From contig OZ320315.1 in the NCBI GenBank assembly GCA_976226885.1, positions 47,988,001 through 48,052,000 of the forward strand: a stretch of DNA of 64,000 nucleotides, written 5' to 3'. Within the stretch, counting starts at the first letter, position 1, and every line of letters starts with the position of its first letter. This document shows positions 24,660 through 64,000 of this stretch, in pieces. Position numbers and translations under genes: made by a program. The notes under the pieces are model-generated. The model searched no databases. It worked only from the letters and a program-made list of their open reading frames with translations, and was not told where the DNA came from. This stretch comes from Iphione sp. A-MEVVRFRX5 (Eukaryota).

Positions 24660-24770
24660 GACTACTTGCTGGCGAAGCCCAAGGTCCATCCCATTCATGG
24701 AGAGGACATGGTGCGTCACATGAAAAGGGAAATGCACAAAATGCTACAAAAGAAGGTTAAAGCCATCAAG
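24660..24770 (+). CDS. CACNA2D3: alpha2delta exon, 111 nt, phase 0-0 (DYLLAKPK...KKVKAIK)
   Basis: ttgcag|GAC...AAG|gtaaat. Resembles the vertebrate 'EIDGLQLVKKLAKNMEEMFHKKSEAVR' exon. Confidence 0.88.
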
Positions 24771-45700: not shown

Positions 45701-48700
45701 AATAGTTTAAATTGAAAAAAATTGTGAGTATGGAGGCAATGGCACAGTGTAGTTGCAATGAGTTCCGTGTACTAATAAATGATTCCACGTAATATATGTT
45801 AAACTAAGTGAGTAATTAATGTTGAACGAACATCTTAAACTAACGTTTACTTTTCTTTTATCTTTCCAGAAATTGGTGCAAGTTGCAGAACAAGCCCACG
45901 CCAACCATATATATGAAAAGAGGCTACAGGTACGTCTGATAAACCTTTACCTTTACCTTAGGTTGACCTGCTTAACTACTGTCTAATACAGAAAACAGAA
46001 ATGGCTATTATCTAGTAAATAGTGATGAAGGATAGAGAAAGTTTTCAATTTTTTTCAACCATTCAACGCTATATTACTGATTTTGTGGGTTTTATTTCAG
46101 CATTGGTATGATCCAAATATGGACCAGTCTGTCAACAGGGAACTTCTACGACGCTACGTATGGATGCATTATTTCATTGACTACTAACCATTGCCTCTTA
46201 ATTTCATTCTCCATTTACCACTTCCTGTGCTTCTGCCACTGGACTCGTCAGTTAGAGTCACATTTCTTTGTACTTACCAAATGCATGACCAACTAAATAT
46301 TTAGATGGATGTCTAAACGGACGGTAATCATATTGGATCTAGTGCGTGACAAATAATCACTCGTCTTTCGCCTTTTATTAGGGGCCATTTCCCAATCGAC
46401 GTTTTGTGATTAACCTAATGCTGATTCGACCAATTTTAACCCCACACATTCGATGACAGAATGAAATGACCACCGCTCTCAGACTGTAGGCATCAAAAGC
46501 ACCACTAGTGAAAAGGCCTCATCCACAGGCGCCAATTTTCGCTCGCCCTTATGTGGAGAGCAGTCTCCAGCGGCACAATACATAGAGCCTGCAATAATGC
46601 TTCATGTTATACCAAACCCTGGCGGGAGGCTTTTAGCGAAGCGGCCGCAGGTTTTCTTGTGTTCTTTGGTTGTGTCATTTTTTGGTTTCCGAGTCAACTC
46701 ACGATTGTTTGTGACACTGCACCTAGCTGAGTGGCAATCTCGACAGCAGCCCTGTGGCGGTATTGACTTTGCCAGGACACAGAGTGTCGGCACATTGCCT
46801 ATGATCGCATAAATACACCAATCACATTTGTTGTTTCATATCAAACGCGCTAATCCCATAATCAGTTTGTGAAATAGAGATATGTTCCTTGTAAGACATT
46901 ATATTAAGTTCCATCATATAATTTCTCTTTCAGTTTTGACGGTCTATGCAACACGAACAATTCACAATATTTTCTCTGGGTATTCATTAATTAGTCTTCT
47001 TCTCTCAAATAAAGACCTGTTTGTATTAACATACACACAAGAAAGAATTCGTATTGCTTTGTCACCATCTTTATTTCCTCGAGATATTGCCCCATGCCGT
47101 GAAATGTATTGTACAATTTATTACCTCGGTTTGACCTCTTGGAGTGCTCATGAAAACTTATGATTTCAGGGGCATCTACTCCCAGACAGATGGCACCTGG
47201 AGCTGCCACCCGACGTCACCCTGGAGATGCTGGTGGAGGCGTGGGTAGGATGAAACCACTAAGACATAAGACCTAACCGCACTTACTACTAAATTTATTA
47301 ATACCATTCTCTTTTTAGATAAGGAAAGAGTGTACAGTTGCAGCTTCACTGCAGGACTTACGTTCTGTTGTATCTTATTATTGTAACGTTCAGTGATTTG
47401 TCCTTTCTTTACCTCCTCCCAACACTTCTATGGGGTAGACCTAAATCAACCTGGCCACTGGACAATCTCAAATATGTCTGAATGGAAATTGCAGCTATCC
47501 CACTCTTTTGCGTTACTAATGTTATTTATTTTAATAAACTAACACATGCAGGAACATCTGAAGATGGACGACAAGTGTCCTCCATGTTGTGCTATGTCTA
47601 TCTACATGTGTGTACGTTTGTCAGAAGAATAAACACGTGACAGCTTATTCATACAAAAAGACAGTGCATTTTTAAAAAAAAAAAAACATTGCACGTTAAT
47701 AGCCTTTCCAACCAAACGCGTGGTTTCCCTAAAATCCTTTAAATATTCAAAGGATTGTCATGCCGGTCTTACCCACGTATGATAATAAACGAGGCGGTAA
47801 ACCTCGCATGGTGTGGAGGCCCTCCATCACGAAGGTAGTCTTGAAACCTTAATGTGCTCAAACGGGACATTTTGATGGGTGAAAGGCCGATCCTTCACAG
47901 CAGATTGTTGCGCCATGAATTTCAGAAACTTCCATTGTGTGGGGTGGAGCATGGAATACGGTCCATGCACACATCGGCTGCTAGCCTTCTACGGGAATAG
48001 TGTTCGCTTCCTTTAGAAACGCTAGGAATAACAGGAACAAAAAAGAGGCCCTAATGGTTTTTACATGTACAAGCTGAAGACGCGAACTGCTTGGCGTTTA
48101 ACGTCGGGATGCAGGCAATATCTCTAGGGTACAGCGACCGACCTGCTCTCCTACACGAGCGCCTCTTAAGACAAATGACCTTAAGCTGACCTTTGCGGGC
48201 TTTGGTGGACGTAATTGAAATGACCACTTGCGTTTACCAATAAGACCCCGTGTTTGCTGTGCCCGCCGGAGCCCCTGACACCAAAAGGAACCGCCGTATG
48301 CCTGATGTCTTATTTGCCTGGCTGATGACCCTCACGGTGTCAAACCCCATACAATCGTTCCCGATGCATCACTTGAATTGAGTTGCTGCTGGGCAGCGAA
48401 GCCTGTTAGGCTCAAGTATGCTTGACAGAATCGGGGTTTGAGGCAAACATTGCAATCCGCTTGGGCACAGAACATGTGCCGTTGCGAACGGACTGATGGT
48501 GTTATCATATACATGTAGGGCCAAGGCCTAAGTGAAAATCGTGTCCGCAGAAAAGAAAGCAAATTTTGTTCATGTTTACGCAGGTCAATTGTATACAAAG
48601 ATAAGATATATATGTATGTTTACTTATGTAACGAATCATCATACTCACACATTTGTATATGTGACCTCTAGATGCTTAGGCTAACAATCGTGATGAAGCT

Positions 48701-51700
48701 ATCTTCTTCAGTTCAGTTGAGGTATTTTTTTAACGTTTATTTATCTGGGCAATCCAAATGGTGCCAGCGTACGCTACTACAATCGTGGCAAGTGAGGATC
48801 CTATGTATAAGAAGGTGTCGATTATTTACAGAGAGACTATATACAAAATATACAAGTATATACAACAAAAGTAATGATGAGATGTGGAATTATAGAAGTG
48901 TGCGAAATAAATAATTATACTATAGTGTTCATTTATTGACTTAGCGAACTCGCCAGTTCCCTTATCCAAAAATGTTCTTTTTGCTTGTGCCATCTAGCTT
49001 CTTATGTCATTATATTTTAGGGCAGGGATGTATCCTACATTAGTCTTTGAATAAATATGATCATTCTAGAAATAGGTGTAGATTATACCCCTGCTAATAG
49101 CCATATCCAGACCTATTTATCTCGCTAAACTGATAACCAAAACAAAGAATCTCGTCTGATATGTCCGTTGTGTATGCTTGTAATTTTACATCTGATACTA
49201 TATGGTTAGTATCGCTTTGCATTGGAAAAGGACAAATTTATTTTAAAGCACAGTTCATGTGTTTCTTAATCAGATCAGCAGGTGGCCGCTGCAAGTTACT
49301 GGGCTGGCTGCGGAGGATTGAGGCCCTGTTGTGGTAGTTCCGCGCCCTTAATGCTGAGTGAAGCCTCAGGAAACAGACCGACACGTTGGCTGCAGGACGG
49401 CGACGGGCCGTCCACACTGGAGCCACTGTTGCCCTCGTCGTCTGCCTAGGAGGCAATCAGTAATATGGCAGGCGGAGGCAATGTTAGCCTGATTGGCATC
49501 TGCTGCCCTGCCAAGCCTCCCAAGCACCGTCACAGCCACAAAAAATACTCGCCTTATGACTTTCTTGTCATTTTTATCTCCTCTAAACAGAGTCACATTG
49601 TCATTCGTGCTAGAGGCTTCTGTGAGATGGTGACCGAGATTTAGATGACACGGAATTAGATTCTAGGCGCGACTTTATTGTTCTGAAAATATTTCTCTCT
49701 AGTGAGTCAGCGCAACCTCCTGGTCAGTTTACTATGGCGGCGGGAGATATCTGCAGGATAATTATGCCTAAAAAGGACAATCCTTCACCAATTCAATGTT
49801 GCCTTATAAATAGATTCCAGCACATCATTGATGTGTTTCTCATGAATTTCATGTACCGACTCGCATCTGCATTCCGCGATTACTAATTATATTCCTCTTT
49901 CAGAGAAGCCAGAAAATGCCAATAGAGATACGTTTTCATACCGGACACATTTGATCTTGCCTTCTCTGAAGAATCTATTTGCTTCAATGTTTATTATCAT
50001 TTGACATTTCAGAAAGATTACCCGAAAGCAAAGAAGCTGAATACGTCGGAATTCACCCTTGTAGAGAACGAGCATTTTAACTACATTCCTGTTAATCTGA
50101 GTATGAGCACCGTCCATGTGCCAACTAATGTCTATGATGAATGTAAGTACCGAAATATGCCGTACAGTTGATGTTAAAGGTTACAAATGACGCCCTTAAA
50201 TAGAAAAAGACTCGCATGATGCATTTGGCTAAAATAAGATTGTCAAGAAGAAAAAGTATCGTTTGAACATCTGTGATATCTTTTTCACCCAAACAGATAA
50301 TATCCCGGATATCTGTGTTTTGCACTTATACGTATAGTTCCTTCACTGTGTGCAAATATATTAACAAATTTTTAGATTCGGTTTAAAATGTCGGTTTGAT
50401 ACCAATGCATTCCATTCATAACAGATACGTCTTGTTGGTTGCCAGGGTATTGGGAGATGCTCAGATGTGTTCGTTTATCAGTACTAAATTAAACTCCTTA
50501 TTTGGCACAAACATATGCAAATGTTGCATGTACACATGTATTTACAGCAAGAGGCACATCTCTGGAGACGAGTTTATTGAGATAAATTTAAGTACATACA
50601 TTTTAAAATACAGATGTTATTTGACACACATGTTCAGCCATAGCCAGCTGATTTATCTGCACAAATGTAGCTACTATAACATAGTAGTAGCCAGCAGACC
50701 CAATCCGTGGCACGGCTAGTAGGAGTCACTCCCAGAAGGTTTAGTCGTAAGTCTTCAACCTCCTCCCTAAGTTTGTTACAAGTCACGGCTCGCATCTTCA
50801 TTGGGCCCTTCAACCAGGAATCACAAACACTAACGAGACAGTCCGAGGCCTGAGCCTGACAGTGTAGAGGCAATCAGCCGATTCGGCGCGGTATAAACAT
50901 ACTTCGCACGCCCGCTCCAGTGCTGCCGAGTAGACCTGATATCAAGTCCTCTCTTAACGACCGTCCTTGCATGATCTCACGCCAAACGCCCACAGACGCC
51001 CGCTGGCATTTCACCGTATCCACGCAATACTTTTTCTGCTAATATTACGCCTCCTCTACTCTGTTTCTGTACCCTTGCCCTAGAGTCCGTCCCATTTTTA
51101 TTCCTGTAAACTCCAACTTCTTAGTATTCTCCCTTTCCCTCCCACCACCCCCACCTCACCATAGCTCTCTTTCTTTGCCCCCCCCCCTCCCCTTTTATCG
51201 TCTCTCTGTTCCAAGCTCTGTCTTCCTCCATAATGTGTCCTTCCTCGAAAAGTGTTGAAATATTGGTACAGTTTAATTGATCGCATCGTTTTAAGCTTTA
51301 CTGTTACATTTTACCATCCCATTCATGAACACAACAATGTAGAATGCTTCTTTGCAAGCAGTAACTCAGTGACAGAAATCTTTAAGCGATCACGTGTTAA
51401 TTATCGCTCTCCCCGAAAATGAGGATTCGCTTCCCTGGAAGTGGCTACAGAAAACTTGCGCTAGGCAACCAACACGTAGCAGGAAGTGGAACTCTTCAAT
51501 CTTTCATTTCTTAGATTGTTATCTCGCATGGAAGGAAGCGATTACGTTTAGCGACTAGCAGCCATAGCGCTCAATGCAAATCACTGCCTGGCAATCGGTC
51601 TGCTCCAATGTTTTTCAAAATACGAGGCACGAAAATGAACTAAACGTATGCAATAGTGACCCGGGATTATTTGATTATATTTCAATAATAGTCCAGTTCA

Positions 51701-54700
51701 CTGGACATGTCCACAATATTGTCGAAGGTAGTGGACATGTAATTCCAAATGTACAATGCTATAGTTGGTGAAGATAATAATTTTATCGTATCTATTCCAT
51801 AACAGTGTGGTTTCAACAATATTATTATTCAAAGAGAGGACCCTAACATAACTGCTGCATTGGTAAGCTTTATCACAGTGGTGGATATCTGAAAGCAATT
51901 GAGATTTTTGATATACGCTGGTACCGTTGAAATATGTACATGCACACAAATGCCGCCCAGATCCGTATACCCAAACGAAAGTAATTTATTTCATAAAGAT
52001 AAAAGTCACTAATATTCTTGGTATTGTTTGCTTCACCGAAGAGGACATGTTACATGGTATCCAAGGTAACCATATCTGGCACTGTATGTAGACTAGCAAG
52101 TTAATGCCCATGCAAATTTACACAAATCTCTAGAGTGTACCGTTCTCACCTTTATAGCTGCCGAAGTTATAAACGGAGTGACCTGGTCTGAGGCCCTCGA
52201 TGAACATTTCCGACAGAACTACGACGATGATGAAACACTTACGTGGCAGTATTTTGGCAGCGCTTCGGGCTTTTTCCGAAACTTCCCAGGTAGGCCTTCT
52301 GGTACCAACAATACTATTGTCTGGCCAGTTTTAATTGAACCACAGTAGTTCTATGTAAAATGTGGTGTTCGAATACTTTTTCTGAAATAATTAGATATTT
52401 TTGTTCATTCTTATAAACCTATATATCTAGTTGATTGTAATCATGTGTACTAAACGTTAAGAAAATATCATGTGTCTAAATGTTCGGTTGATGAATGGTT
52501 CCATATATGGAACGATTTCTAATAGCTATTTGAAAACATGCAATTTAAGATAAAGTGAACTCTTTTGTTTTAAACATAGCCGTTATTAATATTTGTTAAG
52601 CTTACAAGAATGGATGATATTTTTTGTTCTAATTACGTTGATAAAAATAAGGGAACGCTAATGTTTCGTGCAGTGCTATAAATGTACAAATCACATGTGG
52701 ATTGACAATCTTGTCAAATATGCAGTTCACACTAAGTTTTGTTCACATATCATGTAATGATTTTTGACCCACAGAAGCAGTGCCAGTAATGGGTCCTCTT
52801 ATTTGACATTATGTCTGTATGATTTAGTTTTTAAAAATCAACTAAATGCTCAGTTTCTTAACGAATTCCACGAAGGAGTGAAATTCCATTCGACGTTATA
52901 CCTCTAGTTAAAAGCTCGAAGCAGTGGTTACGATAACATGATGTGCGAACTCCGATCGTATATATTTCTTTGCTGCTGTTTTGGCTTTGACAATCGTTTA
53001 TTTCTCGGAGTTGTAATATAAATGCTTGAAAATCGTGTGTTTCTTATCAGTGTCTAAATCATTTGCCAGCCACTTTAAAGTGGATTTCAATGTTTACGTA
53101 TTTCTGGTACGCATGTTCGCTTGACGTCTTCGACAATCTAAACGGAGTGGTGATGGTGCCAGCACTCTCTTTTAAGTGTCAGCGATTTGTGTCACGTTTT
53201 CTATGCCTGAGACTTGCTGTCCTTTGTGTTCAGGCATTCAATGGCCAGGTTCTGGGGTAGATATGTATGACTGTAGAACGCGCGGCTGGTAAGTTATGAG
53301 CAACTAGCTCGTTGAATTCGGGTGATAAGTCGCGCGATTTTATTTACTCCATCGAAAGTCTTTTCATGAGATGTCCCCATTAATAGCCAAAGACAAAATT
53401 CCAGTGGCAAAAAAACTGCCAGTTTGAAATTGCGCAACCTTATGACCCGATATCAAAAAGAGCGTTGCATTGAGAATAGATCCATATCTCCTGGCCCACA
53501 CAATCCACGCACAACACAGTCGTTGAAAGGCTTTACAAATGTTTTTCACCTTCGCCCCACGCTTTTTTGCACACTTCACTTTTTCCCCTTCACCCAGGCA
53601 GTTGAGTTTCTCCACAATGCGTCAACATACCATATTAATATGAATGCGTAGAAACAATACCTTTGTCCTGTTTTACCTATAACCTACCCAGATGTTCCAG
53701 GGTGTCTCTCTGCAACAACAATGCCATTAGGGAGGAAAGACATCATTTTGGAAAAAAACGAGACATTTATCATAAATCTCCAGTCACAAGGAAGCAAAGG
53801 CGGCGTAATACTCTTAAGCTCGTATTTAAAAAGGAAGGAATACGATTAAATTGAATTGGGCTCATATTTTGTGGAACACATCTTTCAGAACATACCATCA
53901 GCGTCATTGCAATGTTAATTCCTTATCCGCCCGCCAGGTCTTTGCGACAAGACTCCTGTAATCGAATGGACTGTCTTTTTCCTACAGCATTTGGTCTCGG
54001 TTCGGCATTTATATCGATAGCTTACTGTGGTGTAGCGTTAACTGATGCGGTTACCTGTTGAAATCGAGAGTAATGCGTCTGAAAGCTTAAAACGAAACGG
54101 TAAATGTCACTAGCATAAAAAAATAAATGCTTGCCAGGAATCTAACGGTCACAAATCCCTAGTCCTTGCAGAATTCTGGAAACAAAACCTTTGGGCTAAA
54201 AAGTTGTCCTCGATTTTAAAATCATCGACGACTGTAATGTACGCAACTGAGACACACTCTGGACATCATATTTTAGGTTCTTCCCAGACATGATGTTTTT
54301 CCTCTTTAAGGTGAATGGAGATTCGATTATTACCAACAGATAACGATGACTAATAAACTATTGATGGAAGCCTGACCAATCAAGTGTCGAGCAACAGGGG
54401 TAACATGTGGTAGATATACATGTCCGTTTGTTGTTGTTGTTGCTGCCCCCCCGGGCTGTCCCCCTTTCTTCTTCTCACAACTTTTCTTGTTAACAACATC
54501 CGCTGAGCAGACAGAATTGTTGCCCGCAGAAAGCTGAGATTAATGGGAGACCCCGACGCCTCGGGTCTCATATTATCATATCAAAACCCTTGAATAGTCA
54601 CTTACAAATGACAGGTTTAGTTGTGACTCGGCCCTCTTACGGACGCCGATAACTCGGCCACAAATGACGTATTTCGTAGAAGTACCACGCGGCATCAATC

Positions 54701-57700
54701 CAGCACCCGACTCGCCATCTGGTGAGGAGACGGTGCTTGTGGCGGAATATGTCACCTCTTACAACCGGTCGAAACCGTTTAGTCTAGGACGGCCCTGCCA
54801 TGTGTATAGGCGGAGGTCACCAGGGATTACATCCTCGGATTATCTCTTGGTCACTTCTAATAAAGCTTTTATGACTGGGTATGATCCAGGAACGTGCTAT
54901 GCCTGAGGAGACTTCCTCGTGTTGCTGGCCTCATAATGTTCGTTCTTTCATCGACACAAATATATATTTCGAGGTAGCAGCACATCAAAATACAAGAGAA
55001 ATTTCTTGTATCACTGCCAAGTATTTTCGTAATTTTTCTTTTTGCTTGTTTTTCGTCATATACCTCAGGCCCATAATTTGTTTCCGGTAGTTCTTGAAAC
55101 ATTTTATTTCATTCTTGTTTTGTATATATCTTCAGAACAAATAATAGAGACATATACAATACACCATTTTGTTGCTTACATCATTAGCTTTCATTTGATA
55201 TACATTTCATAATAATATGAGCAGCAGAACCTATGTTACTATATATCTTTGGGGCTTTGAGTCTTAATTAGCATTGAAAAAAGGAAAAAGAAAAATGAAT
55301 CTGCCTACTGGCCGACTCTCTATTTTTTCAGCATGTTACCAGAAACACACTACTTTTTTATGCCTTACGTATTTTATCAAAACAACGACTTTCACTTGGC
55401 CTATTCAAAATATCTGTGTTTTCGATAACCTGACCTACCCTATTTTCTGGGCTATCGCAACATTTTCTATATTATTGTTTTGCAAATATCTTATCCATGA
55501 GTAAGGCTCATACAATACATTTTGTTCCTTACATCATTAGCTTTCATACGATTCAATTTCAATACAATCCAAGCAGTACTGATATAAGTTATGTACTATC
55601 TAGCTTTTTCAATGGAACATTTGTGTAGTGAAAAAAAAATATCAACCTACCTAATGACCTATTTTCAGCAAGTTTACGGAAACACACATTTTTTAGGTTT
55701 TACTAAGTAGTTAAATGTTAACACTCTATTGTATCAGCGCCATTTGGAACCTCTTAACAATTCAATCCGTAAGATTTCAATATCCCATAAAAGGAAATTG
55801 AGAGTAACTTGACTCTTCAAGAGTTCACTTCTCTGTGTGTCAGCAACTTCCCACGAGTCTTGCTATATGTAGCTCTTCTGAAACGAGCTGGAATAAAGAA
55901 TTTCTATTCTGTAGGTAACCTGCCCTTTGGTTTTGTCGCAATATTATCCCATTTCAGACTATAGCGTATTGTCGATGATTCAAAGGGCATGGTTCCTTTT
56001 GTTTATTTGATAATAACACTGGACACAACACCGCCATGGCTTCCATTTCGCCATACCAAAAGGGCATAATCCTACTCCCATGTCACTGTAGCCCCAGTCC
56101 GGATACACAGCTTTTGGAGTCGCATTTATGCATCGGTATCTCTGGTGATCGAATCTCCAGAACTCCACACTGCTCTCTGGTGTTAGGGACCCGAATGTCA
56201 ATGCAACACGCCACCTGGTGGAAGGCCCTAGTGGCATGGCCATCTAACGCCTGTGTTATTCCCTTCCTTTCCCACCCTCCTCTCCTAGGGACAAACTGGC
56301 GAACTGAAAATTATGAGAAACAAAAGATTGACATGTATGACTGTAGAACAAGGGGCTGGTAAGGATATCTTTTCCCATTTTGTTTCGTGCATACATTCCT
56401 ACAATAGGTGATTTCTCGAGCAACGCACTTTTATCCGTACTTTATATATTGCACATTACACAGTGGTAGAGGTTAAGAAGCATGGACTCTTACCCTTTGA
56501 ATAGATACCTTACCTTCGAATAACGCGTTCTATTTATGCCTTGTATTCATTCTCACTAAGACTTTGATTATAACTTGACGGACGCCAACGACAGTGCTAC
56601 CTGTAGATAAAAGTACGCTATTTGATTATAAATGATTCAAAACTAGTTCGCATAAAACAGAACATTTCGCCAAGTTGAAATAGAATGTATACTGTCACAA
56701 GACAATGCTGTTCTTTGCATAATTGTACAAGCCCATCATCACATGCTTCACAGGTACATTCAGGCTGCGACATCTCCAAAGGACATTGTGATACTTATTG
56801 ACGCCAGTGGAAGTATGACAGGTCTCAGGATGGAAATTGCTAAAGCAACAGTTGAGAAGATATTAGATACTTTGAGTGATGACGACTTTTTCAACATAAT
56901 CAAGGTAATCTCCTATTCTGCTTACAAGTACACATTTTACTCTGCATACCGTGTGTAATAAGGTGGAAATGGAAATATTTGTTATTAAGCTATGTTTATG
57001 TAAGCTATATACGCATAGGCTGTCCGCGTAACTTTAAAATACGTGTATTTTCTGTTTTATCCTTAAGAAGACAGTATTCTCTATGGAAATTCAATGTTTG
57101 TTTTCAGTTTTCCAATGTACCAAGCTATGTAGATGACTGTTTCAATGGAACTTTGGTTCAAGCAAATGCCGACAACAAGAAGGTGCGTTTATTTTCTTTG
57201 ACAGCAGTCTTCTCAAAGCTAACTCTGGATGTTTTGGAAATACATCAAAGAAGAGCTGTTCCTTTCACACCAAGACCTTAAATATCTAGGCACAAGATCA
57301 AAAGATTGTCTACCTTAATGCATGACGCTGATGCGTTCGTTTCCTTTGTATGTACACGCTATACAAAACATTATACGTGAGAGGTCTATGAAATGTCCTT
57401 CGAATCTCAGTTATTAACCATTAGTTAACTTTCAGCGTTTGAAAGAAGCCATACGACATATGTCAACGAAGGAAATCGCTCAGTTTGACGATGCACTCAT
57501 TCAAGCCTTTGACCTACTAGGAGAAGTAAGTCTACGAATTCATATCTAATTACCTGAACTGGCATGCCACAATTGGATCTCACGCGATTTTCGGAGCATG
57601 ATCAAATACATAAACTGTTTTATACCTTCAAAATTATAAATCAACTTCGAAGTGAGAACAAATGTATCATGCCATGTACAACTGAGTGAAATAAGGTAAA

Positions 57701-60700
57701 CCCTCCGACATGTCCCTGTTGTAACGTTCGTACTAAAAGTCACATGACACACTATCACATTTTCCTTAGGTTCCGTCCTTCCCAAATCCGATGCAAATCA
57801 GTTTTAATTTGTTCCTTAACAAATATGGCACTCTCATAATGCGTGTGCGGCAAGAACGGAACATTCTCCTTTCCTGATCCCTCTGTCTTTCAATACACAT
57901 TGGCTACTCAATTTGATGCATGCCACTTTGTCATTATAAGCGTCACATTTCCATACATCAACAAGAAATACATATTACAATGTTTAAATCTTTCCATTTT
58001 CCCATTGTATAGAAACTAAATTAAACAAATAGCCTACAACCTTGGTTTCTTATAGCGCTCAATATTTAATACAACGCATCTGTGTATTTGATAATTTTAG
58101 TGTCCAACGTACTCTCCCTATGAAATAATGGTAATAAGTGTTCTTTTCTTAGATGTACAAACCATATTCATACCGTCCTGCATGTTGAAGTGCATGTAAC
58201 ATCTGTAAAATCTAGTCAAAAATAAACTCTGCTTGAGATCTTGTTTTTAATTATTTGGACGCTACGTTCTTTCACTATCCTTCTTGCAATACACTGTTGA
58301 GCGAACGTTAGTCGATTCCATAGGGCAAAGATCATGCAGATGTTTATTTTATTTAGATTTTACAAAAGACTAACACGCATTGAACAACATAAACATTTTC
58401 ATTTCAACTTTTTCGGCCGAGTGACATTTACCATGGAAGCTAGTCTTACAATGCAAGGATCTTTTAAATATGCGTGGCTTATGACTGGTGTTCCCATGGA
58501 AACTTTACACAGCAAATTTAATGCTATCAAATTTACCAGATTTGGGTAATAATTCATAGTAGTAAAAGAGGCTTTGCATGAATGGTTTGCACATTAGCCT
58601 GTCATGCCTCGATTTGTAAATTTGACTACCTGGTCGATGCTTACGTTCCATGGACATACACACCTTGTTGCCATGCACACTTGGTTACTGTAGCAACAAG
58701 CTTGGTGCACTAAGTTTAGGCAATAATCACTCAGTGTACATGCCATGTGATTTGTTGTCAGAACAAATGTGCGCCGTCGCCTTTGCTGGTAAAATATTTG
58801 ACAAATTGTCTGATAAAATGATCAAAAACTAAAAGCAATAACCGTATAGGCAGTACTTTACATTGAATAAGATATATATTCAAATATTTAAGGTCCAGTG
58901 ATGGTACATGTACAGTTAATTAAAATAATACTAAAATGACAAGAGGATGCCATTTAAGTTCCTTAGATATGTTCCCATTATATAGAGGTGTGTACTCTAT
59001 GTATAAGATACGGTGTCTTTTATAGATGAATCGCACTGGCAAAGGAACCTTATGCAATCGTGCCATCATGCTCATCACAGATGGTGCTCCAGAAACCTAT
59101 GAGAATATTTTCCGGCAATATAACTGGCCGGAGAAGAATGTAAGTCAAATGCCTCTTTCAAAATACCCCCGTAAATGTACATCTGCCTGCTGAGTAACGA
59201 TTTAGACGTTTCTGTTCTAGTTAGAATCAGATAATATCGCCTTTTGATGGTGATTAATGTACTATATACCCTTTCCTTAGGTGAGGGTATTCACATACCT
59301 CATAGGACGAGAAGTAGGCGACTCTAAGCAGGTCAAGTGGATGGCGTGCGCCAATAAAGGTGAGTTCAACAAATGCAAGTATTATTGGTTATCTTGAAGC
59401 TATAGCATATATGACCAATGCCGAAACTTATGAAGTAAGCCACTCCAATGGTTAAAATGAACGGTGGAGGTCGGTTTATCATGAGCAGATACGATCGAGA
59501 ATCGAGAAAAACGAAAAAGCAATTTACAGTGTAATCCAAGGATACATGAAAGCTCAATCCATTCCTTTCTGCGTGTTCTCGAAGGAAGTCATTTAGCTCG
59601 GGTATTTACAACGAGAAAGGAATTCTCTCTGTAATCATGTTATTAATGTAGGATTAGTCAGAATAAATTCAAACGGTGGAGGTATATACAATGGTTACTT
59701 TCCTGAGTTAGTGACTGTATTTCATAATGGGAATAAATTACAATGAGTGTCAATTTTTTAACATCAATGATTATTACTTTAATCAAACATATCGTTTGCA
59801 GGATTCTACTCCCCTATCAGCACTCTGGCAGATGTTCAGGAGAAAGTGCAGGTCCGTCCTTTTACTTATTTGTGCTGTTGTTACCTTATATCAAGCAGTA
59901 ATTTTATTTTATTTTATTTTTGCACAAGTTTTAATGTTTATTGCAAAGGTGTCCATTGTATAAATATATCTTACCGGTTATTAAAGACGCATGACTTCGT
60001 CGTGGCGTGTCTTGTGTTCTCAAGTAATATTAATTCTGTTAAATATAATTTCTATGATTTACGAAAGAAAAACTTACTTAGGTTAAGAAATGATTCTGTT
60101 CATATTCTTCTTCTGATGTCTCATGCAAAACATTTTATTGTGTTCATGAATATTTGTTCAATTGTACATCTCTTCGTTGTGTTCACTGCTGTTTTACGCT
60201 AATTTGTTTACGTATGTTTCGAAAAAAAAGGTTCCTCCATTTAGTCCAAGGATATATTCCAAAGGCATTGGAGGTGGAGCTGTCGACTTTGAATATTTAA
60301 CCACATCTAGTATAGTAGAAAAGAAACCCTCTATCATTGCAGCAGATAATCTGTTTAGAATACCCTTATGTACCCTACTAGCCTTGTCCCTCATTAGGAG
60401 CATCAATATGACCGATTAGAATGAAAACATTGTACCAACCGCTGTTGTAAGCAGCAATAGTAAACGTACTGACATACTAGCCAAGTAGTAGCTTCTTCTT
60501 TTAGGAGTTTTACACCGTAAGTAGAGAAGACAGAAGAGTCAAAAGTAACGAAAAAGAAGAAAAAGAGTCTTTCGTTGAATATTGTGTGACCCCTTTCCAG
60601 GAATACATCCATGTTATCAGCCGTCCGATGGTGATTAAACGTAAATACACTAACACGTGGACAAGTGTATATTCTGATGCAGCGGTAGGTCGCCAAATCA

Positions 60701-61407
60701 CATCACCTCATTTCAATGTGTGTGAGAGACCTAGATTTATGCTAAGTATTTTCTTCTTCTTGCATCTGCTGTCGACGTGTCTGTGTCATCGTGAACATCA
60801 AACCTTTATTTGGACGTGTATGTTTGTGTGCTGTGTGCTTCTTTCAATGCTCCCTTCCGTGGAAAAAAAGCAGGTTCAATCGGGATGATGAGACAACTCT
60901 TCAAACGACAGTTCCAGGGAACATCTGCAGCAGTTGACCATTGCCTGGCTCATTGCTTCTGTCCTTCTGTCTAAGGATGTGTAGTTACAGCAATGAACTT
61001 CCACATGTCCACTGTAACACTTTGATGAAGGCCATCATTTGTCCATCTACAATAGCAAAAGAAATTATCAATTAGAGAGAATATATATTACCTTGTGGAA
61101 GATCGTTGCATGTTAGGTTTTATTCACCACAAGTTTCTCCTTTGTAAGTCATAAGCCAGTTCACAGTTTTCTTTCATTACTGGTCTATGACACAAAGGCA
61201 GTTTGTGTTCATATTACTCACTGGTTAGAGTAGGTGTTTATTTTCTTTTCTGATTAGTTATTTCTTCCTAGATCGCTACATTATCTTGTGTGTAACTTTC
61301 AGAACTATGTGAAAACCGTCAGCAGGCCGATGGTTATAGATAAACCGGACAAAACTATATGGACCCAGGTGTACATGTCCGCCGATTCGGCCGAGGATTC
61401 CGACCAG
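24660..61407 (+). CDS. CACNA2D3: Voltage-dependent calcium channel subunit alpha-2/delta (alpha2delta-3/4-like), multi-exon, partial (5' and 3' exons not in window)
   Basis: Manually spliced GT-AG exons join in frame to [37 protein letters not shown]|[20 protein letters not shown]|[44 protein letters not shown]|[44 protein letters not shown]|[alt exon]..[10 protein letters not shown]|[32 protein letters not shown]|..CFNGTLVQA..|..|..[18 protein letters not shown]|[19 protein letters not shown]|[16 protein letters not shown]|[alt exon]..SRPMVI..WT. The motifs [24 protein letters not shown] and WMACANKG match alpha2delta-3/4 as I recall them. 3 vs 4 cannot be resolved, so read the symbol as '-like'. 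Confidence 0.95.
29620..31700 (-). mobile_element. Decayed non-LTR retrotransposon (CR1/L2-like ORF2: APE endonuclease + reverse transcriptase), antisense in the 21-kb intron
   Basis: Minus-strand translation gives, in the expected order: [11 protein letters not shown] (31603-31571, APE), [20 protein letters not shown] plus the helical linker (ORF 30787-31236), [23 protein letters not shown] (30174-30145), LLINSLP..LYADD (29943-29929), [15 protein letters not shown]. Many stops and frameshifts. Clade assignment is approximate. Confidence 0.8.
38630..38714. repeat. Imperfect (AGT)n trinucleotide repeat
   Basis: gtggtagtagtagtagtattagctagtagc...ggtagtagtagc. Confidence 0.9.
41618..41631. repeat. 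Poly-G tract (G14)
   Basis: Read directly. Confidence 0.95.
45870..45929 (+). CDS. CACNA2D3: alpha2delta exon, 60 nt, phase 0-0 ([20 protein letters not shown])
   Basis: tctttccag|AAA...CAG|gtacgt. Matches vertebrate 'RLVEAAEEAHLKHEFDADLQ' in length and pattern. Not in the ORF track. Confidence 0.9.
50013..50142 (+). CDS. CACNA2D3: alpha2delta exon, 130 nt, phase 0-1 (KDYPKAKK...[10 protein letters not shown])
   Basis: catttcag|AAA...GAA T|gtaagt. [21 protein letters not shown] matches the family motif HF-x-x-x-PVN-x-S-x-S-x-V-x-x-PTN-x-Y. Confidence 0.93.
52158..52289 (+). CDS. CACNA2D3: alpha2delta exon, 132 nt, phase 1-1 ([11 protein letters not shown]...[15 protein letters not shown])
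   Basis: tttatag|CT GCC...CCA G|gtaggc. Contains WQYFGS-x-x-GFFR of the dCache_1 domain. Confidence 0.96.
53234..53288 (+). CDS. CACNA2D3: alpha2delta alternative exon A1, 55 nt, phase 1-2 ([19 protein letters not shown])
   Basis: tgtgttcag|GC ATT...GGC TG|gtaagt. In frame with both neighbouring constitutive exons; homologous to 56289-56358. Confidence 0.88.
55154..55700. repeat. Diverged tandem duplication, about 356-bp period
   Basis: atacaatac..ttttgtt(g/c)cttacatcattagctttcat at 55154 and 55510. The downstream blocks tattttcagca and gaaacacac are also repeated. Confidence 0.75.
56289..56358 (+). CDS. CACNA2D3: alpha2delta alternative exon A2, 70 nt, phase 1-2 ([24 protein letters not shown])
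   Basis: Long pyrimidine tract then ctcctag|GG ACA...GGC TG|gtaagg. In frame with both neighbouring constitutive exons. Confidence 0.9.
56754..56904 (+). CDS. CACNA2D3: alpha2delta exon, 151 nt, start of VWA domain with DASGS MIDAS motif
   Basis: cacag|G TAC ATT CAG...ATC AAG|gtaatc. [50 protein letters not shown]. Confidence 0.98.
57108..57182 (+). CDS. CACNA2D3: alpha2delta exon, 75 nt, VWA ([25 protein letters not shown])
   Basis: ttttcag|TTT...AAG|gtgcgt. C-F/L-NGTLVQA family motif. Confidence 0.96.
57436..57525 (+). CDS. CACNA2D3: alpha2delta exon, 90 nt, VWA ([30 protein letters not shown])
   Basis: aactttcag|CGT...GAA|gtaagt. Phase 0-0; AL-x-x-AF-x-x-L motif. Confidence 0.93.
59026..59139 (+). 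CDS. CACNA2D3: alpha2delta exon, 114 nt, VWA ([38 protein letters not shown])
   Basis: cttttatag|ATG...AAT|gtaagt. AIMLITDG and YNWP motifs. Confidence 0.97.
59281..59359 (+). CDS. CACNA2D3: alpha2delta exon, 79 nt ([27 protein letters not shown])
   Basis: ttccttag|GTG...AAA G|gtgagt. Contains WMACANKG, whose Cys corresponds to the one that disulfide-links alpha2 to delta in vertebrates. Confidence 0.97.
59802..59851 (+). CDS. CACNA2D3: alpha2delta exon, 50 nt ([17 protein letters not shown])
   Basis: tttgcag|GA TTC...CAG|gtccgt. ISTLADVQE motif. Confidence 0.95.
60601..60684 (+). CDS. CACNA2D3: alpha2delta alternative exon B1, 84 nt, phase 0-0 ([28 protein letters not shown])
   Basis: ccctttccag|GAA...GCG|gtaggt. 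Matches family 'EYLHVLSRP..WT-x-x-Y-x-D'. Confidence 0.9.
61303..61407 (+). CDS. CACNA2D3: alpha2delta alternative exon B2, 105 nt, phase 0-0 ([35 protein letters not shown])
   Basis: aactttcag|AAC...CAG|gtttgt. Gapless homology to B1 over 28 residues. The donor is weak, so the 3' end is less certain. Confidence 0.82.
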
Positions 61408-64000
61408 GTTTGTTGTTAGCAGCCGCAGCTTCTTGGTGACGAGGAAGTTCATTTCGTGTGTGGTTTCCTTTGACGTTGGCTCACTTGGGTTGTAGTATTA
61501 CCGGTGTATGCCTGGGAAGCTCCTCTAGCATCCGTTGACTGCACCGCCCTCTTTGAGGTCCCTCGCTATTCCCACCTCGAGTCACGTCACTCTCTATGAC
61601 TTAACGTTACTCTTTCAGGCACTGCAAGGTGGTAGTGGGTTTAGAGGTGTTGACTTCTTGGATAGATAGTCAGCGAACCAACCATTTTATTCCCCGTCTT
61701 CTTCCCATTGTCCTCCCAAAAGAACCTCCTCTTTGCAAAGCCCTCGACTCTAACTAGTTCTTAGCATGGCCACGACGGGTCGTTCTGAAGGGGCAATGGG
61801 TTTTTTTCACCATTACCACTTCCTCACGTTATCGCCCCTTACTATTTCATGCTAATACAAGGTTCAGTTGCCTCTTTGGCCTTTCAGGCCCTGATTCCAT
61901 CATTTAGCCCCCCTTTGAGCACTCTAAGCTGGCGCGATACCTACAGATGGGCAAACACCATCGAGCCTGACCCTCGCCAGGCTACGGTAAGATGCAACCA
62001 AATGTAGGGTTCTTTTCGTAATTGCGTAACCATAGCTCCTATGGTTCCCTAGTCCATGCCTGTGTAACTACTGCACTCTGCATAGCTTGTCCCATGCCTC
62101 ACCGTAGGCCTAGGACCGAAACCCCAAATGACATCGATATATCCATAAATGGAAATGAGGTGCATAATATTAATTGACTTTGTTGCTGTCATCTATGGCA
62201 TAAGGTCTTGTCTTTTTCAGAACTATTCACCTGATTGATTACATTAATTTATAGTGGTATATGGTCTCTATATTGAGCTTTTAAAAGCATGTCTTCAAGG
62301 ATAAAAAGGACATACGTTTCACAATATTTGTATGGAATACCGGAAGGAATATTTTCATATTTACTCTCGACTAAAGTTTCTTTGCTACATTTCCTGTTTG
62401 TAACTATCACTTTTGTGACATGCATTTCCCCCCGTTAATACCTATGCCAAACGCAACCTTTAACAACTTCTTTGAAAACAGGATTGCCTATATCCTCCCT
62501 ATGAACAGCTGTCTTGCTTGTAAGTCTATGAAATCCATAGTTGGCTTCATAAAGTTCTGATGACTACAACAATGTGCCTCCTACTCATAGATATGAAGTA
62601 GAAAATTAGCTTTCCTGTCAATTATCGAGTCCCAATCAAAAGCTGAACAAGTCTTAGAAAACCCATACAGTAAGAAGTTGACGTTTCATCGGTAATAGTA
62701 TATTAGATAGTATTCATTATGATGTTTGTAGCTATTAAGTATGGAACCCCTTATCCCCTTTGAGAATCTCGCTTTATTAGGTGGTCGATCTAATAAATTA
62801 GAATTACACCACGTTTAGAACTTAGCTTCCTAGCAAAGCAGCTTATGGTGTCAGGACGTACATGCGTACTGCACTAGCCTCGATGAATTTAAAATGTTTC
62901 TTCATCGGATACACCCTTTAATAAATGTACCTTACACTGAAGAAATATTATTCGGGTATTACTATTTTCCCGTCCAATTCCTGACACATTCCAATCTCAC
63001 CATAGACAGTTCACATTTCATGCTAACGAGATCATTGTATATTGTATTAAGCAATTAGATATAAAAACTTTTGCCAAAGCCATCACAGGTCATTGCTGCC
63101 ACCAAAGGTTACATTTGCAAAAATTTCATGAAGAAAATTTGCTTCCCGTTTTTCCCATCAAACGTCACACACCGCAAATATTAATGTAACATTCCTTTAT
63201 TCTGTACAGTGACAGTGTGATTGCCATTACTGCATGGGCCATGTTCGAAGCATCTTTACATAGAGACGTCTGCCACAAACAAATGCTAATGTTTACTTTG
63301 AAGGTGGCAGTTTTGAAATGTCCAAGCATGGTCAGAGATCTGTAACAGTGAACGTACTCCTGGACAATCTCACCTATGAGTGAAGTTCGTAATGTCACCA
63401 GTTGCCTATCGACTCGTGCAAAACACCGGCAATTGACAAGGATTGAGCATTTTTCCCCTTTTTGCTTGATATCATTCGGAAGTATTCTGTCACCACAATA
63501 TGGAACGAGATGCAACAAAAGGCATCTATGAAAAACTGTGCCAATCGCTTTTACATTCTGTTCGTAAACTTGTTTTCTTCTCAATGTTACTAAGTGTCAT
63601 TTTATTGCAATATGTTGCTCACTATTGAATTGTATTCGGTCAACATTTCTAGAATGTAAGCTTATCCTTGTTGGGTTATTATTACTTGGTGCCAGTATTA
63701 TTTATAGGCAAACGCTTCTTATGGTAATTTAAAGTAGACGTTATAGCTTCACTCCCATAAAACCTTTCCACTATAAACTTACTTTCATCTAGCCAATATA
63801 TTAAAGGCCAGAGTTTTCTGTTGTTGTTTGGTTGGATAGCTTTTAGGGGGATTTTAAATTGGTGATAGCCCGCAATGTTTGCTAACATTATGTTGATACT
63901 TTCTTTGCACTCCGGATGCTGGTGGTGGTGGTGATGATTCTTCGCCCTCCTCGCATTATTACAGCATGACGCTCAGGTAACAACCGACAGACTGATCTCA

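What the first reader, a model, noticed from the sequence alone, without database searches (positions are those of the whole stretch)
53234..61407. Two duplicated exon pairs either side of the VWA domain could combinatorially remodel the dCache_1 ligand pocket of one alpha2delta gene
Seen: exactly two exon positions in the reconstructed gene exist as homologous tandem duplicates (A1/A2 and B1/B2); I found no duplicate of any other exon. Established: the first dCache_1 domain of alpha2delta is split by the VWA insertion. Its amino-acid/gabapentin pocket uses a YxxxxRxWY motif before the VWA (in alpha2delta-1, the Arg of ..DVRRRPW; R217 mature numbering) and a W-T-x-x-Y-x-D segment after it. Pair A encodes YDCRTRGW and pair B encodes WTxVY. 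Inference: four isoforms (A1B1, A1B2, A2B1, A2B2) could differ in ligand specificity or trafficking, giving by splicing a diversity that vertebrates get from four paralogs. I do not know of a description of this arrangement, but could not search the literature.
Basis: partly seen in the sequence, partly recalled or inferred. Interest (0 to 1): 0.9.

Follow-up and report, generated by a model that had tools for sequence, protein, structure and literature searches.

The report
Two alternative-exon pairs in alpha2delta gene
A worm calcium-channel alpha2delta gene carries two pairs of interchangeable exons, both conserved across worm lineages, that encode the walls of its amino-acid-binding pocket; one pair was already reported in molluscs, the other has not been described in the papers searched.

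Summary
The + strand carries the N-terminal part of an alpha2delta-3/4-like gene. It has two tandem homologous exon pairs: A1 53234-53288 and A2 56289-56358, then B1 60601-60684 and B2 61303-61407.

All four exons have AG/GT splice sites, and all four combinations keep the frame open. A1+A2 together, or neither, gives an early stop. The B exons are multiples of three.

Neither copy is a relic. Both pairs sit in the same order in Capitella and Dimorphilus. Pair B is also in Ridgeia and Lamellibrachia, where B2 has dN/dS about 0.17. Pair A is also on another annelid contig and in Lingula.

RefSeq isoform models swap the A exons in Lingula, and both A and B in Lineus.

Every B2-type exon replaces the residue aligned to pocket-lining Asp454 of alpha2delta-1 with Ser or Ala; every B1 keeps Asp. 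A1 and A2 keep all pocket residues and differ in a 5-residue loop.

The B cluster is not new. Dunn et al. 2018 listed mutually exclusive exons at this position in Aplysia, oyster and octopus. I found no description of pair A or of the pocket link.

No RNA data could be obtained for this species. The effect on ligand binding is inferred.

The parts
24660..24770 (+). upstream coding exon of the alpha2delta gene (N-terminal helix region)
   Evidence: It gives a tblastn match to transcript-derived annelid protein P0170 residues 71-107. The splice sites are read from sequence.
45870..45929 (+). upstream coding exon
   Evidence: tblastn match to P0170. Boundaries are ag|...|gtacgt.
50013..50142 (+). 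VWA_N exon
   Evidence: Pfam VWA_N, 36.4 bits against a cutoff of 34.7. It matches Capitella P0194 at 84%. Boundaries.
52158..52289 (+). constitutive VWA_N exon before pair A. It carries the residues aligned to W207, and a Phe at the alpha2delta-1 Ala217 position.
   Evidence: Pfam VWA_N, 63 bits. Boundaries. The last codon is split and completed by either A exon.
53234..53288 (+). exon A1 (55 nt), short-loop version: W, a 7-residue loop, then YDCRTRG plus two bases of the Trp codon
   Evidence: Splice sites. Orthologues are found in Capitella, Dimorphilus, Ridgeia, Lamellibrachia and contig L004.
56289..56358 (+). exon A2 (70 nt), long-loop version: W, a 12-residue loop (the length in alpha2delta-1), then the same YDCRTRG
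   Evidence: Splice sites. Orthologues with the signature T-x-W-R-T are on L004 and L009 and in transcript-derived P0170. A2-type exons are also in Capitella and Dimorphilus.
56754..56904 (+). first VWA exon (completes the Trp, then [10 protein letters not shown] and the MIDAS DxSxS)
   Evidence: Pfam VWA. In the representative search, 226 proteins score below 1e-10.
57108..57182 (+). VWA exon
   Evidence: tblastn, splice sites.
57436..57525 (+). VWA exon
   Evidence: tblastn, splice sites.
59026..59139 (+). VWA exon
   Evidence: tblastn, splice sites.
59281..59359 (+). VWA exon
   Evidence: tblastn, splice sites.
59802..59851 (+). last exon before pair B ([12 protein letters not shown])
   Evidence: tblastn, splice sites. 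It ends in phase 0.
60601..60684 (+). exon B1 (84 nt), canonical version ending WTSVYSDAA. It keeps the Asp aligned to D454.
   Evidence: Sequence. The exon is 84 nt in all five annelid loci examined. The donor GCG|gtaggt is shared by four of them: window, Capitella, Ridgeia, Lamellibrachia.
61303..61407 (+). exon B2 (105 nt), divergent version ending [16 protein letters not shown]. It has Ser at the D454 position and an acidic 7-residue extension.
   Evidence: Sequence. Orthologues are in Capitella, Dimorphilus, Ridgeia and Lamellibrachia, and four of the five share the donor CAG|gtttgt. dN/dS is 0.17 between Ridgeia and Lamellibrachia.

Best explanation
The window holds the N-terminal part of an annelid alpha2delta-3/4-like calcium-channel subunit gene. 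[quoted passage not shown]

Pair A supplies the strand-loop-strand carrying W225, Y238 and R243 (alpha2delta-1 numbering). A1 and A2 keep these residues. The loop between them is 7 residues in A1 and 12 in A2. Exclusivity of pair A is enforced by the reading frame: 55 and 70 nt, so both or neither gives a premature stop and presumably NMD.

Pair B supplies the strand carrying Y452 and the pocket wall 453-456. B1 keeps the canonical Y-x-D-A. B2 has Y-x-S-A, a different charge pattern before the Trp, and a short extension after the strand. Exclusivity of pair B is not enforced by frame, and its mechanism is unknown.

Shown: both copies of both pairs are intact, orthologous across annelid families and under purifying selection, and relatives have isoform models or transcripts that swap them.

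Inferred: this species makes up to four isoforms, and the swaps, above all B1/B2, retune or switch off binding of a small amino-acid-like ligand in the dCache_1 pocket.
For: Gene identity:
- Window exons hit Pfam VWA_N and VWA above the cutoffs.
- The closest proteins are annelid alpha2delta proteins with VWA_N, VWA, dCache_1 and VGCC_alpha2.
- They align to solved alpha2delta-1 chains at E about 1e-120.

Anatomy: splice sites, phases and open frames for all four combinations, and stops for A1+A2 or no A exon.

Conservation:
- Capitella L001 has A1, A2, B1 and B2 in the same order, although only A1 and B1 are annotated.
- Dimorphilus L007 has all four, and its annotation uses A2 and B1.
- L004 has A1 and A2. 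L009 has A2.
- Ridgeia and Lamellibrachia have B1 and B2.
- Donor motifs are type-specific across four of five annelid loci: B1 GCG|gtaggt, B2 CAG|gtttgt.
- B2 exons cluster apart from their own B1. In 0 of 500 label shuffles was the clustering as tight.

Selection:
- Between Ridgeia and Lamellibrachia, dN/dS is 0.07 for B1 and 0.17 for B2.
- A1 and A2 stay intact between the window and L004, although synonymous sites of neighbouring constitutive exons are saturated (pS 0.93-0.95).

Use one at a time in relatives:
- Lingula X2 versus X1 swap A.
- Lineus X2 swaps A and Lineus X5 swaps B.
- Aplysia transcripts carry three alternative B exons (PMC5818475 supplement).
- Transcript-sized contigs P0170 (A2-type) and P0181 (A1-type) exist.

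Pocket link:
- The pocket residue list is and the AA_motif.
- Alignments place Ser or Ala at D454 in every B2-type exon (window, Capitella, Dimorphilus, Ridgeia, Lamellibrachia, Lineus, Aplysia variant 2) and Asp in every B1.
Against: - There is no transcript evidence for this species. No sequencing run could be listed, so read laying was never used.
- The exon downstream of B2 is outside the window.
- Pair B is in frame both ways. One public gene model (Lamellibrachia P0400) even joins B1 and B2 in tandem, so strict exclusivity of B is not proven in annelids.
- I found no conserved RNA pairing that would explain B exclusivity.
- All AA_motif residues visible in the window are kept in all four isoforms, so the ligand effect could be subtle or absent.
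- No coordinates were available to measure distances. The pocket assignment rests on sequence alignment to alpha2delta-1 and on a published residue list.
- RefSeq X-isoforms are computational models. I could not inspect their RNA support.
Confidence: 0.8

Rival explanations
1. The pairs are real mutually exclusive exons, but what they tune is not the ligand pocket. The target would be another property of the first dCache_1/VWA module, such as contact with the alpha1 subunit, folding and trafficking, or another extracellular partner.
For: - A1 and A2 keep every pocket residue and differ only in a surface-type loop.
- B2 also changes charge before the Trp and adds 3-7 residues after the strand.
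- The gene has the alpha2delta-3/4-type Phe said to restrict the pocket.
- Vertebrate cache-domain splice inserts are discussed in terms of partner choice as well as drug affinity.
Against: The one substitution shared by all B2-type exons across annelids, a nemertean and a mollusc is at a pocket-lining position, D454 to S/A. In some lineages the alternative exon also removes an AA_motif residue: Lineus alternative A has Gln at R243, Aplysia variant 3 has Asn at Y452, and siboglinid B2 has Phe at Y452.
Confidence: 0.3
2. Pair B is not strictly exclusive. B2 is an in-frame cassette that can be included together with B1 or skipped, giving longer or shorter proteins.
For: Both exons are multiples of three, and B1+B2 reads open. 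The 618-nt intron between them imposes no steric block. A Lamellibrachia gene model contains B1 followed by B2.
Against: B1 and B2 encode the same beta-strand with the same Arg-Pro, Trp and aromatic residues, so two copies would not fit one fold. The nine Lineus RefSeq isoforms read here (X1-X9) carry one or the other, never both. Aplysia transcripts likewise carry one. The Lamellibrachia entry is a partial ab initio-style model.
Confidence: 0.1
3. One member of each pair (A2 or A1, and B2) is a decaying duplicate that is no longer spliced in.
For: Public annotations of Capitella use only A1 and B1. B2 is much more divergent than B1. The B2 donor gtttgt is weak.
Against: All copies keep open frames, correct phase and AG/GT sites in species whose synonymous sites are saturated relative to each other. 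B2 has dN/dS of 0.17. A2-type sequence is present in transcript-derived P0170 and in the Dimorphilus model.
Confidence: 0.04

Closest known systems
Mutually exclusive exons of molluscan CaV alpha2delta ('Alternative splice 7' of Aplysia KY705238; also Crassostrea and Octopus), Dunn et al. 2018, Sci Rep 8:3263 (PMC5818475)
   Same: The position in the protein is the same as pair B: the exon after ...VQ that encodes x-Y-[IV]-x-V-L-x-R-P ... W-T-x-x-Y and ends just before G-L-x-M-M. One variant is canonical (Y-E-D). One is longer and lacks the Asp (Y-Y-A), like B2.
   Different: Aplysia has three variants and the window has two. The paper lists them in a table as lying 'between VWA and Cache domains', with no link to the ligand pocket, which was recognised only in 2022. 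It reports no alternative at the A position. Orthology of the mollusc and annelid genes was not tested here.
RefSeq isoform models of Lineus longissimus (XP_0646326xx) and Lingula anatina (XP_0134011xx) alpha2delta-3-like
   Same: They swap homologous exons at the A position in both species, and at the B position in Lineus. The Lingula A exons lie in tandem in the genome.
   Different: These are computational models, not described in any paper I could find. In Lingula the exon order looks reversed relative to annelids, and no B2 was detected. Lineus alternative A loses the motif Arg, which the window's A exons do not.
Vertebrate alpha2delta-1 splice regions A, B and C (Angelotti and Hofmann 1996; Lana et al. 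2014, as reviewed in PMC9901441)
   Same: Alternative splicing inside the cache domains of alpha2delta. At least one variant has altered gabapentin affinity.
   Different: [quoted passage not shown] They are not mutually exclusive duplicated exons, and they do not encode the AA_motif or pocket strands.
Mutually exclusive exon pairs of CaV alpha1 genes (CaV2.2 e37a/b, CaV1.2 e8/8a and e21/22, Drosophila cacophony pairs)
   Same: Tandem duplicated exons in calcium-channel genes, used one at a time to tune function. In invertebrates this is argued to stand in for vertebrate paralogs.
   Different: A different subunit and a different protein fold.

Membership tests
alpha2delta auxiliary subunit of voltage-gated calcium channels | VWA_N region followed by a VWA domain with a DxSxS MIDAS start | tested here: met
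   Window exons score above the Pfam cutoffs: VWA_N at 36.4 and 63 bits (cutoff 34.7) and VWA at 25.1 bits (cutoff 23.8). D-A-S-G-S is present in exon 56754-56904.
alpha2delta auxiliary subunit of voltage-gated calcium channels | dCache_1 and VGCC_alpha2 domains, and a C-terminal delta/GPI part | not testable with these tools
   These parts lie beyond the end of the window. The closest full-length relatives (Capitella, Ridgeia, Dimorphilus) have them.
alpha2delta-3/4 subtype rather than alpha2delta-1/2 | R-x-R rather than R-R-R, and a Phe at the alpha2delta-1 Ala217 position | tested here: met
   The window reads G-F-F-R-N-F-P and C-R-T-R-G-W. The criterion comes from PMC9901441. The best named hits are alpha2delta-3/4-like.
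mutually exclusive exon cluster | tandem homologous exons with the same phase and canonical splice sites | tested here: met
mutually exclusive exon cluster | exactly one exon of the cluster in each mature mRNA | tested here: inconclusive
   No RNA run was listed for this species. In relatives, Lingula and Lineus RefSeq isoforms and Aplysia transcripts carry one per cluster. One Lamellibrachia model joins B1 and B2.
mutually exclusive exon cluster | a mechanism that enforces exclusivity | tested here: inconclusive
   Pair A: the frame does it, since both or neither gives a stop. Pair B: the frame does not, and no conserved intronic pairing was found.
dCache_1AA amino-acid-binding pocket (AA_motif YxxxxRxWY ... 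Y ... D) | the N-terminal part, Y-x4-R-x-W-Y | tested here: met
   Y-D-C-R-T-R-G-W-Y is read with either A1 or A2 joined to exon 56754.
dCache_1AA amino-acid-binding pocket (AA_motif YxxxxRxWY ... Y ... D) | the C-terminal part: Tyr (Y452) and Asp (D493) | tested here: inconclusive
   The Tyr is present in both B1 and B2. The Asp lies in an exon outside the window. Relatives have G-x-D-V-P at that position.
dCache_1AA amino-acid-binding pocket (AA_motif YxxxxRxWY ... Y ... D) | actual binding of an amino acid or gabapentinoid | not testable with these tools
   This needs binding assays.

The most novel reading that the evidence does not exclude
The two clusters are an ancient lophotrochozoan switch on the alpha2delta ligand pocket. 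The B2-type exon always removes the Asp454-equivalent. In some lineages the alternative exon removes an AA_motif residue outright: Arg243 to Gln in Lineus alternative A, and Tyr452 to Asn or Phe in Aplysia and siboglinid variants. One gene would then make ligand-responsive and ligand-blind (or differently tuned) alpha2delta subunits in different cells. That would be a natural experiment on what the endogenous ligand of this pocket does.
Probability: 0.3. Interest if true: 0.75.

Novelty: new variant of a known kind. Interest (0 to 1): 0.55.

Why it matters
The physiological role of the amino-acid/gabapentinoid pocket of alpha2delta is still unclear. Reviews note that bound amino acids had no detectable effect on trafficking by themselves.

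Several invertebrate phyla have kept, presumably since before those lineages split, a splice choice that exchanges exactly the two segments forming this pocket, with a consistent Asp-to-Ser/Ala change in one of them. That argues that the pocket's state matters in vivo.

It also gives ready-made natural variants to compare (B1 versus B2, A1 versus A2).

It extends the single published mention of alpha2delta mutually exclusive exons, in molluscs, to annelids, a nemertean and a brachiopod. It adds a second cluster. It shows that public annotations of Capitella, Ridgeia and Dimorphilus miss one exon of each pair, and that one Lamellibrachia model wrongly joins two.

It is not a new principle. Mutually exclusive exons are common in channel genes, and, judging by other notes of this scan, in this genome.

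Tried and rejected
1. RNA evidence for this species. The look-up of sequencing runs on window:56250-62249 listed no run, and its cap is one search. Read laying could therefore not be used.
2. The exon after B2. A sensitive tblastn of 61300-64000 with ten relatives found nothing convincing. It lies beyond the window.
3. Competing RNA structures as the mechanism for B exclusivity. The window has only 11-bp perfect cores (60704-60722/62144-62162 and 60992-61011/61434-61453). About one such match is expected by chance in 2.7 kb (my estimate). None recurs at homologous places in Ridgeia and Lamellibrachia. Rejected as evidence.
4. Amphioxus 'isoforms' with different A exons (P0099 versus P0153) turned out to be two genes or haplotypes that differ throughout, at 78% identity. 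This is not exon swapping.
5. A tree of B exons has only 31 columns. B2 is clustered but not resolved as one clade, and a single origin is not excluded. I made no tree for the still shorter A exons.
6. Loci that could not be fetched: Lineus (gene range too long), and Owenia P0100, Lingula X2 and Gordionus (not on record).
7. Structure prediction was not run. The tools return no coordinates, so distances to the pocket could not be measured. Residue mapping was done by alignment to solved alpha2delta-1 sequences instead.
8. Rfam gave no match in the window.
9. Literature searches for alpha2delta, CACNA2D, stj or unc-36 together with 'mutually exclusive' found only alpha1-subunit cases, apart from Dunn et al. 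2018.

Full report
**What is in the window**

Reading the flanks gives four exons with canonical AG and GT sites:
- A1 53234-53288, 55 nt.
- A2 56289-56358, 70 nt.
- B1 60601-60684, 84 nt.
- B2 61303-61407, 105 nt.

Guided by tblastn with annelid alpha2delta proteins, I defined the neighbouring constitutive exons: 24660-24770, 45870-45929, 50013-50142, 52158-52289, 56754-56904, 57108-57182, 57436-57525, 59026-59139, 59281-59359 and 59802-59851.

Joined in silico, A1B1, A1B2, A2B1 and A2B2 all read open. A1+A2, or no A exon, runs into a stop within about 25 codons. B1+B2, or no B exon, stays in frame.

The exon that follows B2 is not in the remaining 2.6 kb. The window therefore shows somewhat less than half of the protein. 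Within it, only the A and B exons give double hits.

**What gene it is**

Single exons hit Pfam VWA_N (63 and 36 bits, cutoff 34.7) and VWA. Exon 56754-56904 finds 226 proteins below 1e-10.

Full-length relatives are annotated as alpha2delta-3/4-like and carry VWA_N, VWA, dCache_1 and VGCC_alpha2. The closest are annelids: Capitella, Ridgeia, Dimorphilus and two transcript-sized Logan contigs. Other notes of this scan also place the genome among annelids.

Capitella's protein aligns to solved alpha2delta-1 chains at about 1e-120.

The window has Phe at the position of alpha2delta-1 Ala217, and C-R-T-R rather than R-R-R. That is the alpha2delta-3/4 pattern, which PMC9901441 links to exclusion of bulky ligands.

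**Are both copies functional? Comparative evidence**

- Capitella (L001) has A1-type, A2-type, B1-type and B2-type exons in the same order. All have good splice sites and the right phase, although its annotation uses only A1 and B1.
- Dimorphilus (L007) has all four. Its annotation uses A2 and B1.
- An annelid contig hidden in a metagenome assembly (L004) has A1 and A2. Another such contig (L009) shows A2.
- Ridgeia (L002) and Lamellibrachia (L006) have one A exon but both B exons.
- Owenia has no intron at either position and no duplicates.
- Lingula has two tandem A exons and one B.

The B exons carry type-specific marks. B1 is always 84 nt, with donor GCG|gtaggt in four of five annelids. 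B2 is 93-105 nt, with donor CAG|gtttgt in four of five. The duplication therefore predates these families.

A tree on 31 columns is poorly resolved. Still, B2 exons cluster (0 of 500 shuffles as tight), and none groups with its own B1.

Between Ridgeia and Lamellibrachia, dN/dS is 0.07 for B1 and 0.17 for B2.

Between the window and L004, synonymous sites of constitutive exons are saturated (pS 0.93-0.95), yet A1 and A2 are intact. Their synonymous sites are less changed (pS 0.46 and 0.70), as is often seen in regulated exons. A decaying duplicate is thus excluded for practical purposes.

**Are they used one at a time?**

This species is therefore untested.

In relatives:
- Lingula RefSeq isoform X2 differs from X1 and X3-X6 by exchanging one A exon for the other.
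- Lineus X2 exchanges the A exon and Lineus X5 exchanges the B exon. No isoform has both or neither.
- Transcript-sized contigs carry an A2-type exon (P0170) or an A1-type exon (P0181).
- For molluscs there is published transcript evidence. Dunn et al. 2018 list 'three mutually exclusive exons' of alpha2delta 'between VWA and Cache domains' in Aplysia, conserved in Crassostrea and Octopus. Their supplement shows three versions of exactly the B exon.
- Sampled RefSeq isoform sets of a nematomorph, starfish, hemichordates, amphioxus, lampreys, a chimaera, frogs, a gar and a marmoset show no exchange at A or B. They show only small cassettes just after B.
- Drosophila stj is reported with three isoforms that differ elsewhere.

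In the data sampled, the clusters look lophotrochozoan.

**Relation to the ligand pocket**

The gabapentin structure paper lists the pocket residues W207, V209, Y219, W225, Y238, R243, W245, Y452, D454, A455, L456, T463 and D493.

The universal amino-acid motif is YxxxxRxWY before the VWA, and Y...D after it. That Asp is D493 (rat D491).

By alignment, pair A encodes W225, Y238, R243 and two bases of the W245 codon. Pair B encodes Y452, D454 and A455.

A1 and A2 keep all of these residues. They differ in the loop between W225 and Y238: 7 residues in A1, and 12 in A2, the same length as alpha2delta-1.

B1 reads Y-S-D-A-A. B2 reads Y-M-S-A-D followed by an acidic extension.

The residue at D454 is Asp in every B1-type exon examined. 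It is Ser or Ala in every B2-type exon: window, Capitella, Dimorphilus, Ridgeia, Lamellibrachia, Lineus and Aplysia variant 2.

In some lineages the alternative exon also loses a motif residue:
- Lineus alternative A has Gln at R243.
- Siboglinid B2 has Phe at Y452.
- Aplysia variant 3 has Asn at Y452.

Any effect on binding is inference.

**Mechanism of exclusivity**

For pair A the frame suffices. For pair B I found no explanation. Inverted repeats around B2 are at chance level and are not conserved between Ridgeia and Lamellibrachia.

**Novelty**

The B cluster is a new member of something published in molluscs.

In the searchable library I found no description of the A cluster, of the coexistence of both clusters, of their spread across annelids, a nemertean and a brachiopod, or of the consistent D454 change. 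The isoforms do exist silently in RefSeq.

**Verdict**

- Observation: confirmed.
- Interpretation: partly supported.
- Best explanation: two conserved mutually exclusive exon clusters, with pocket tuning as the leading but unproven function.
- Interest: moderate.

Noticed in passing
L006:12703-13787 (Lamellibrachia satsuma), protein P0400: The public partial gene model joins B1 and B2 in tandem in frame. This is probably an annotation artefact made possible because both exons are multiples of three.
   Followed up: partly
L008:29456-29656 and 32090-32218 (Owenia fusiformis): The A exon is fused with the first VWA exon, and the B exon with the exon before it. There are no introns at these positions and no duplicates, so this early-branching annelid lacks both clusters.
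   Followed up: partly
window 53254-53294 and 56328-56363, versus L004:2099-2139: The 3' halves of A1 and A2, including the first intron bases, are about 90% identical at the DNA level to the A1 exon of a species whose constitutive exons are synonymously saturated. This suggests RNA-level constraint or gene conversion on TATGACTGTAGA...GGCTGgtaag.
   Followed up: partly
proteins P0352-P0362, P0371-P0381 and P0363-P0366 (hemichordates, amphioxus, starfish): The junction right after the B exon is a hot spot for small cassettes and alternative splice sites in deuterostomes (for example +VNE, and a 15-residue insert). Lingula, Ridgeia and Dimorphilus also have short inserts there.
   Followed up: no
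L004 (ENA ERZ23486763 scaffold_21265) and L009 (JGI 3300003944): Annelid nuclear DNA carrying this gene sits in assemblies filed as metagenomes. It is presumably host DNA.
   Followed up: no
protein P0029/P0407 (Gordionus): The single annotated A and B exons of this nematomorph read Y-D-C-R-V-K-D-W and Y-H-T-K-A. Lys is at the motif Arg position and Thr at D454. Its locus could not be fetched.
   Followed up: no
window 24770-45870 and 45929-50013: The gene has very long 5' introns (21 kb and 4 kb). The start codon exon was not located. The window holds no Rfam match.
   Followed up: no
this genome, other windows (scan notes): A word search of the scan's notes for 'mutually exclusive exon' returned 368 notes for this genome. 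They include ion-channel genes (nAChR, KCNQ, RyR), so duplicated alternative exons seem frequent here.
   Followed up: no
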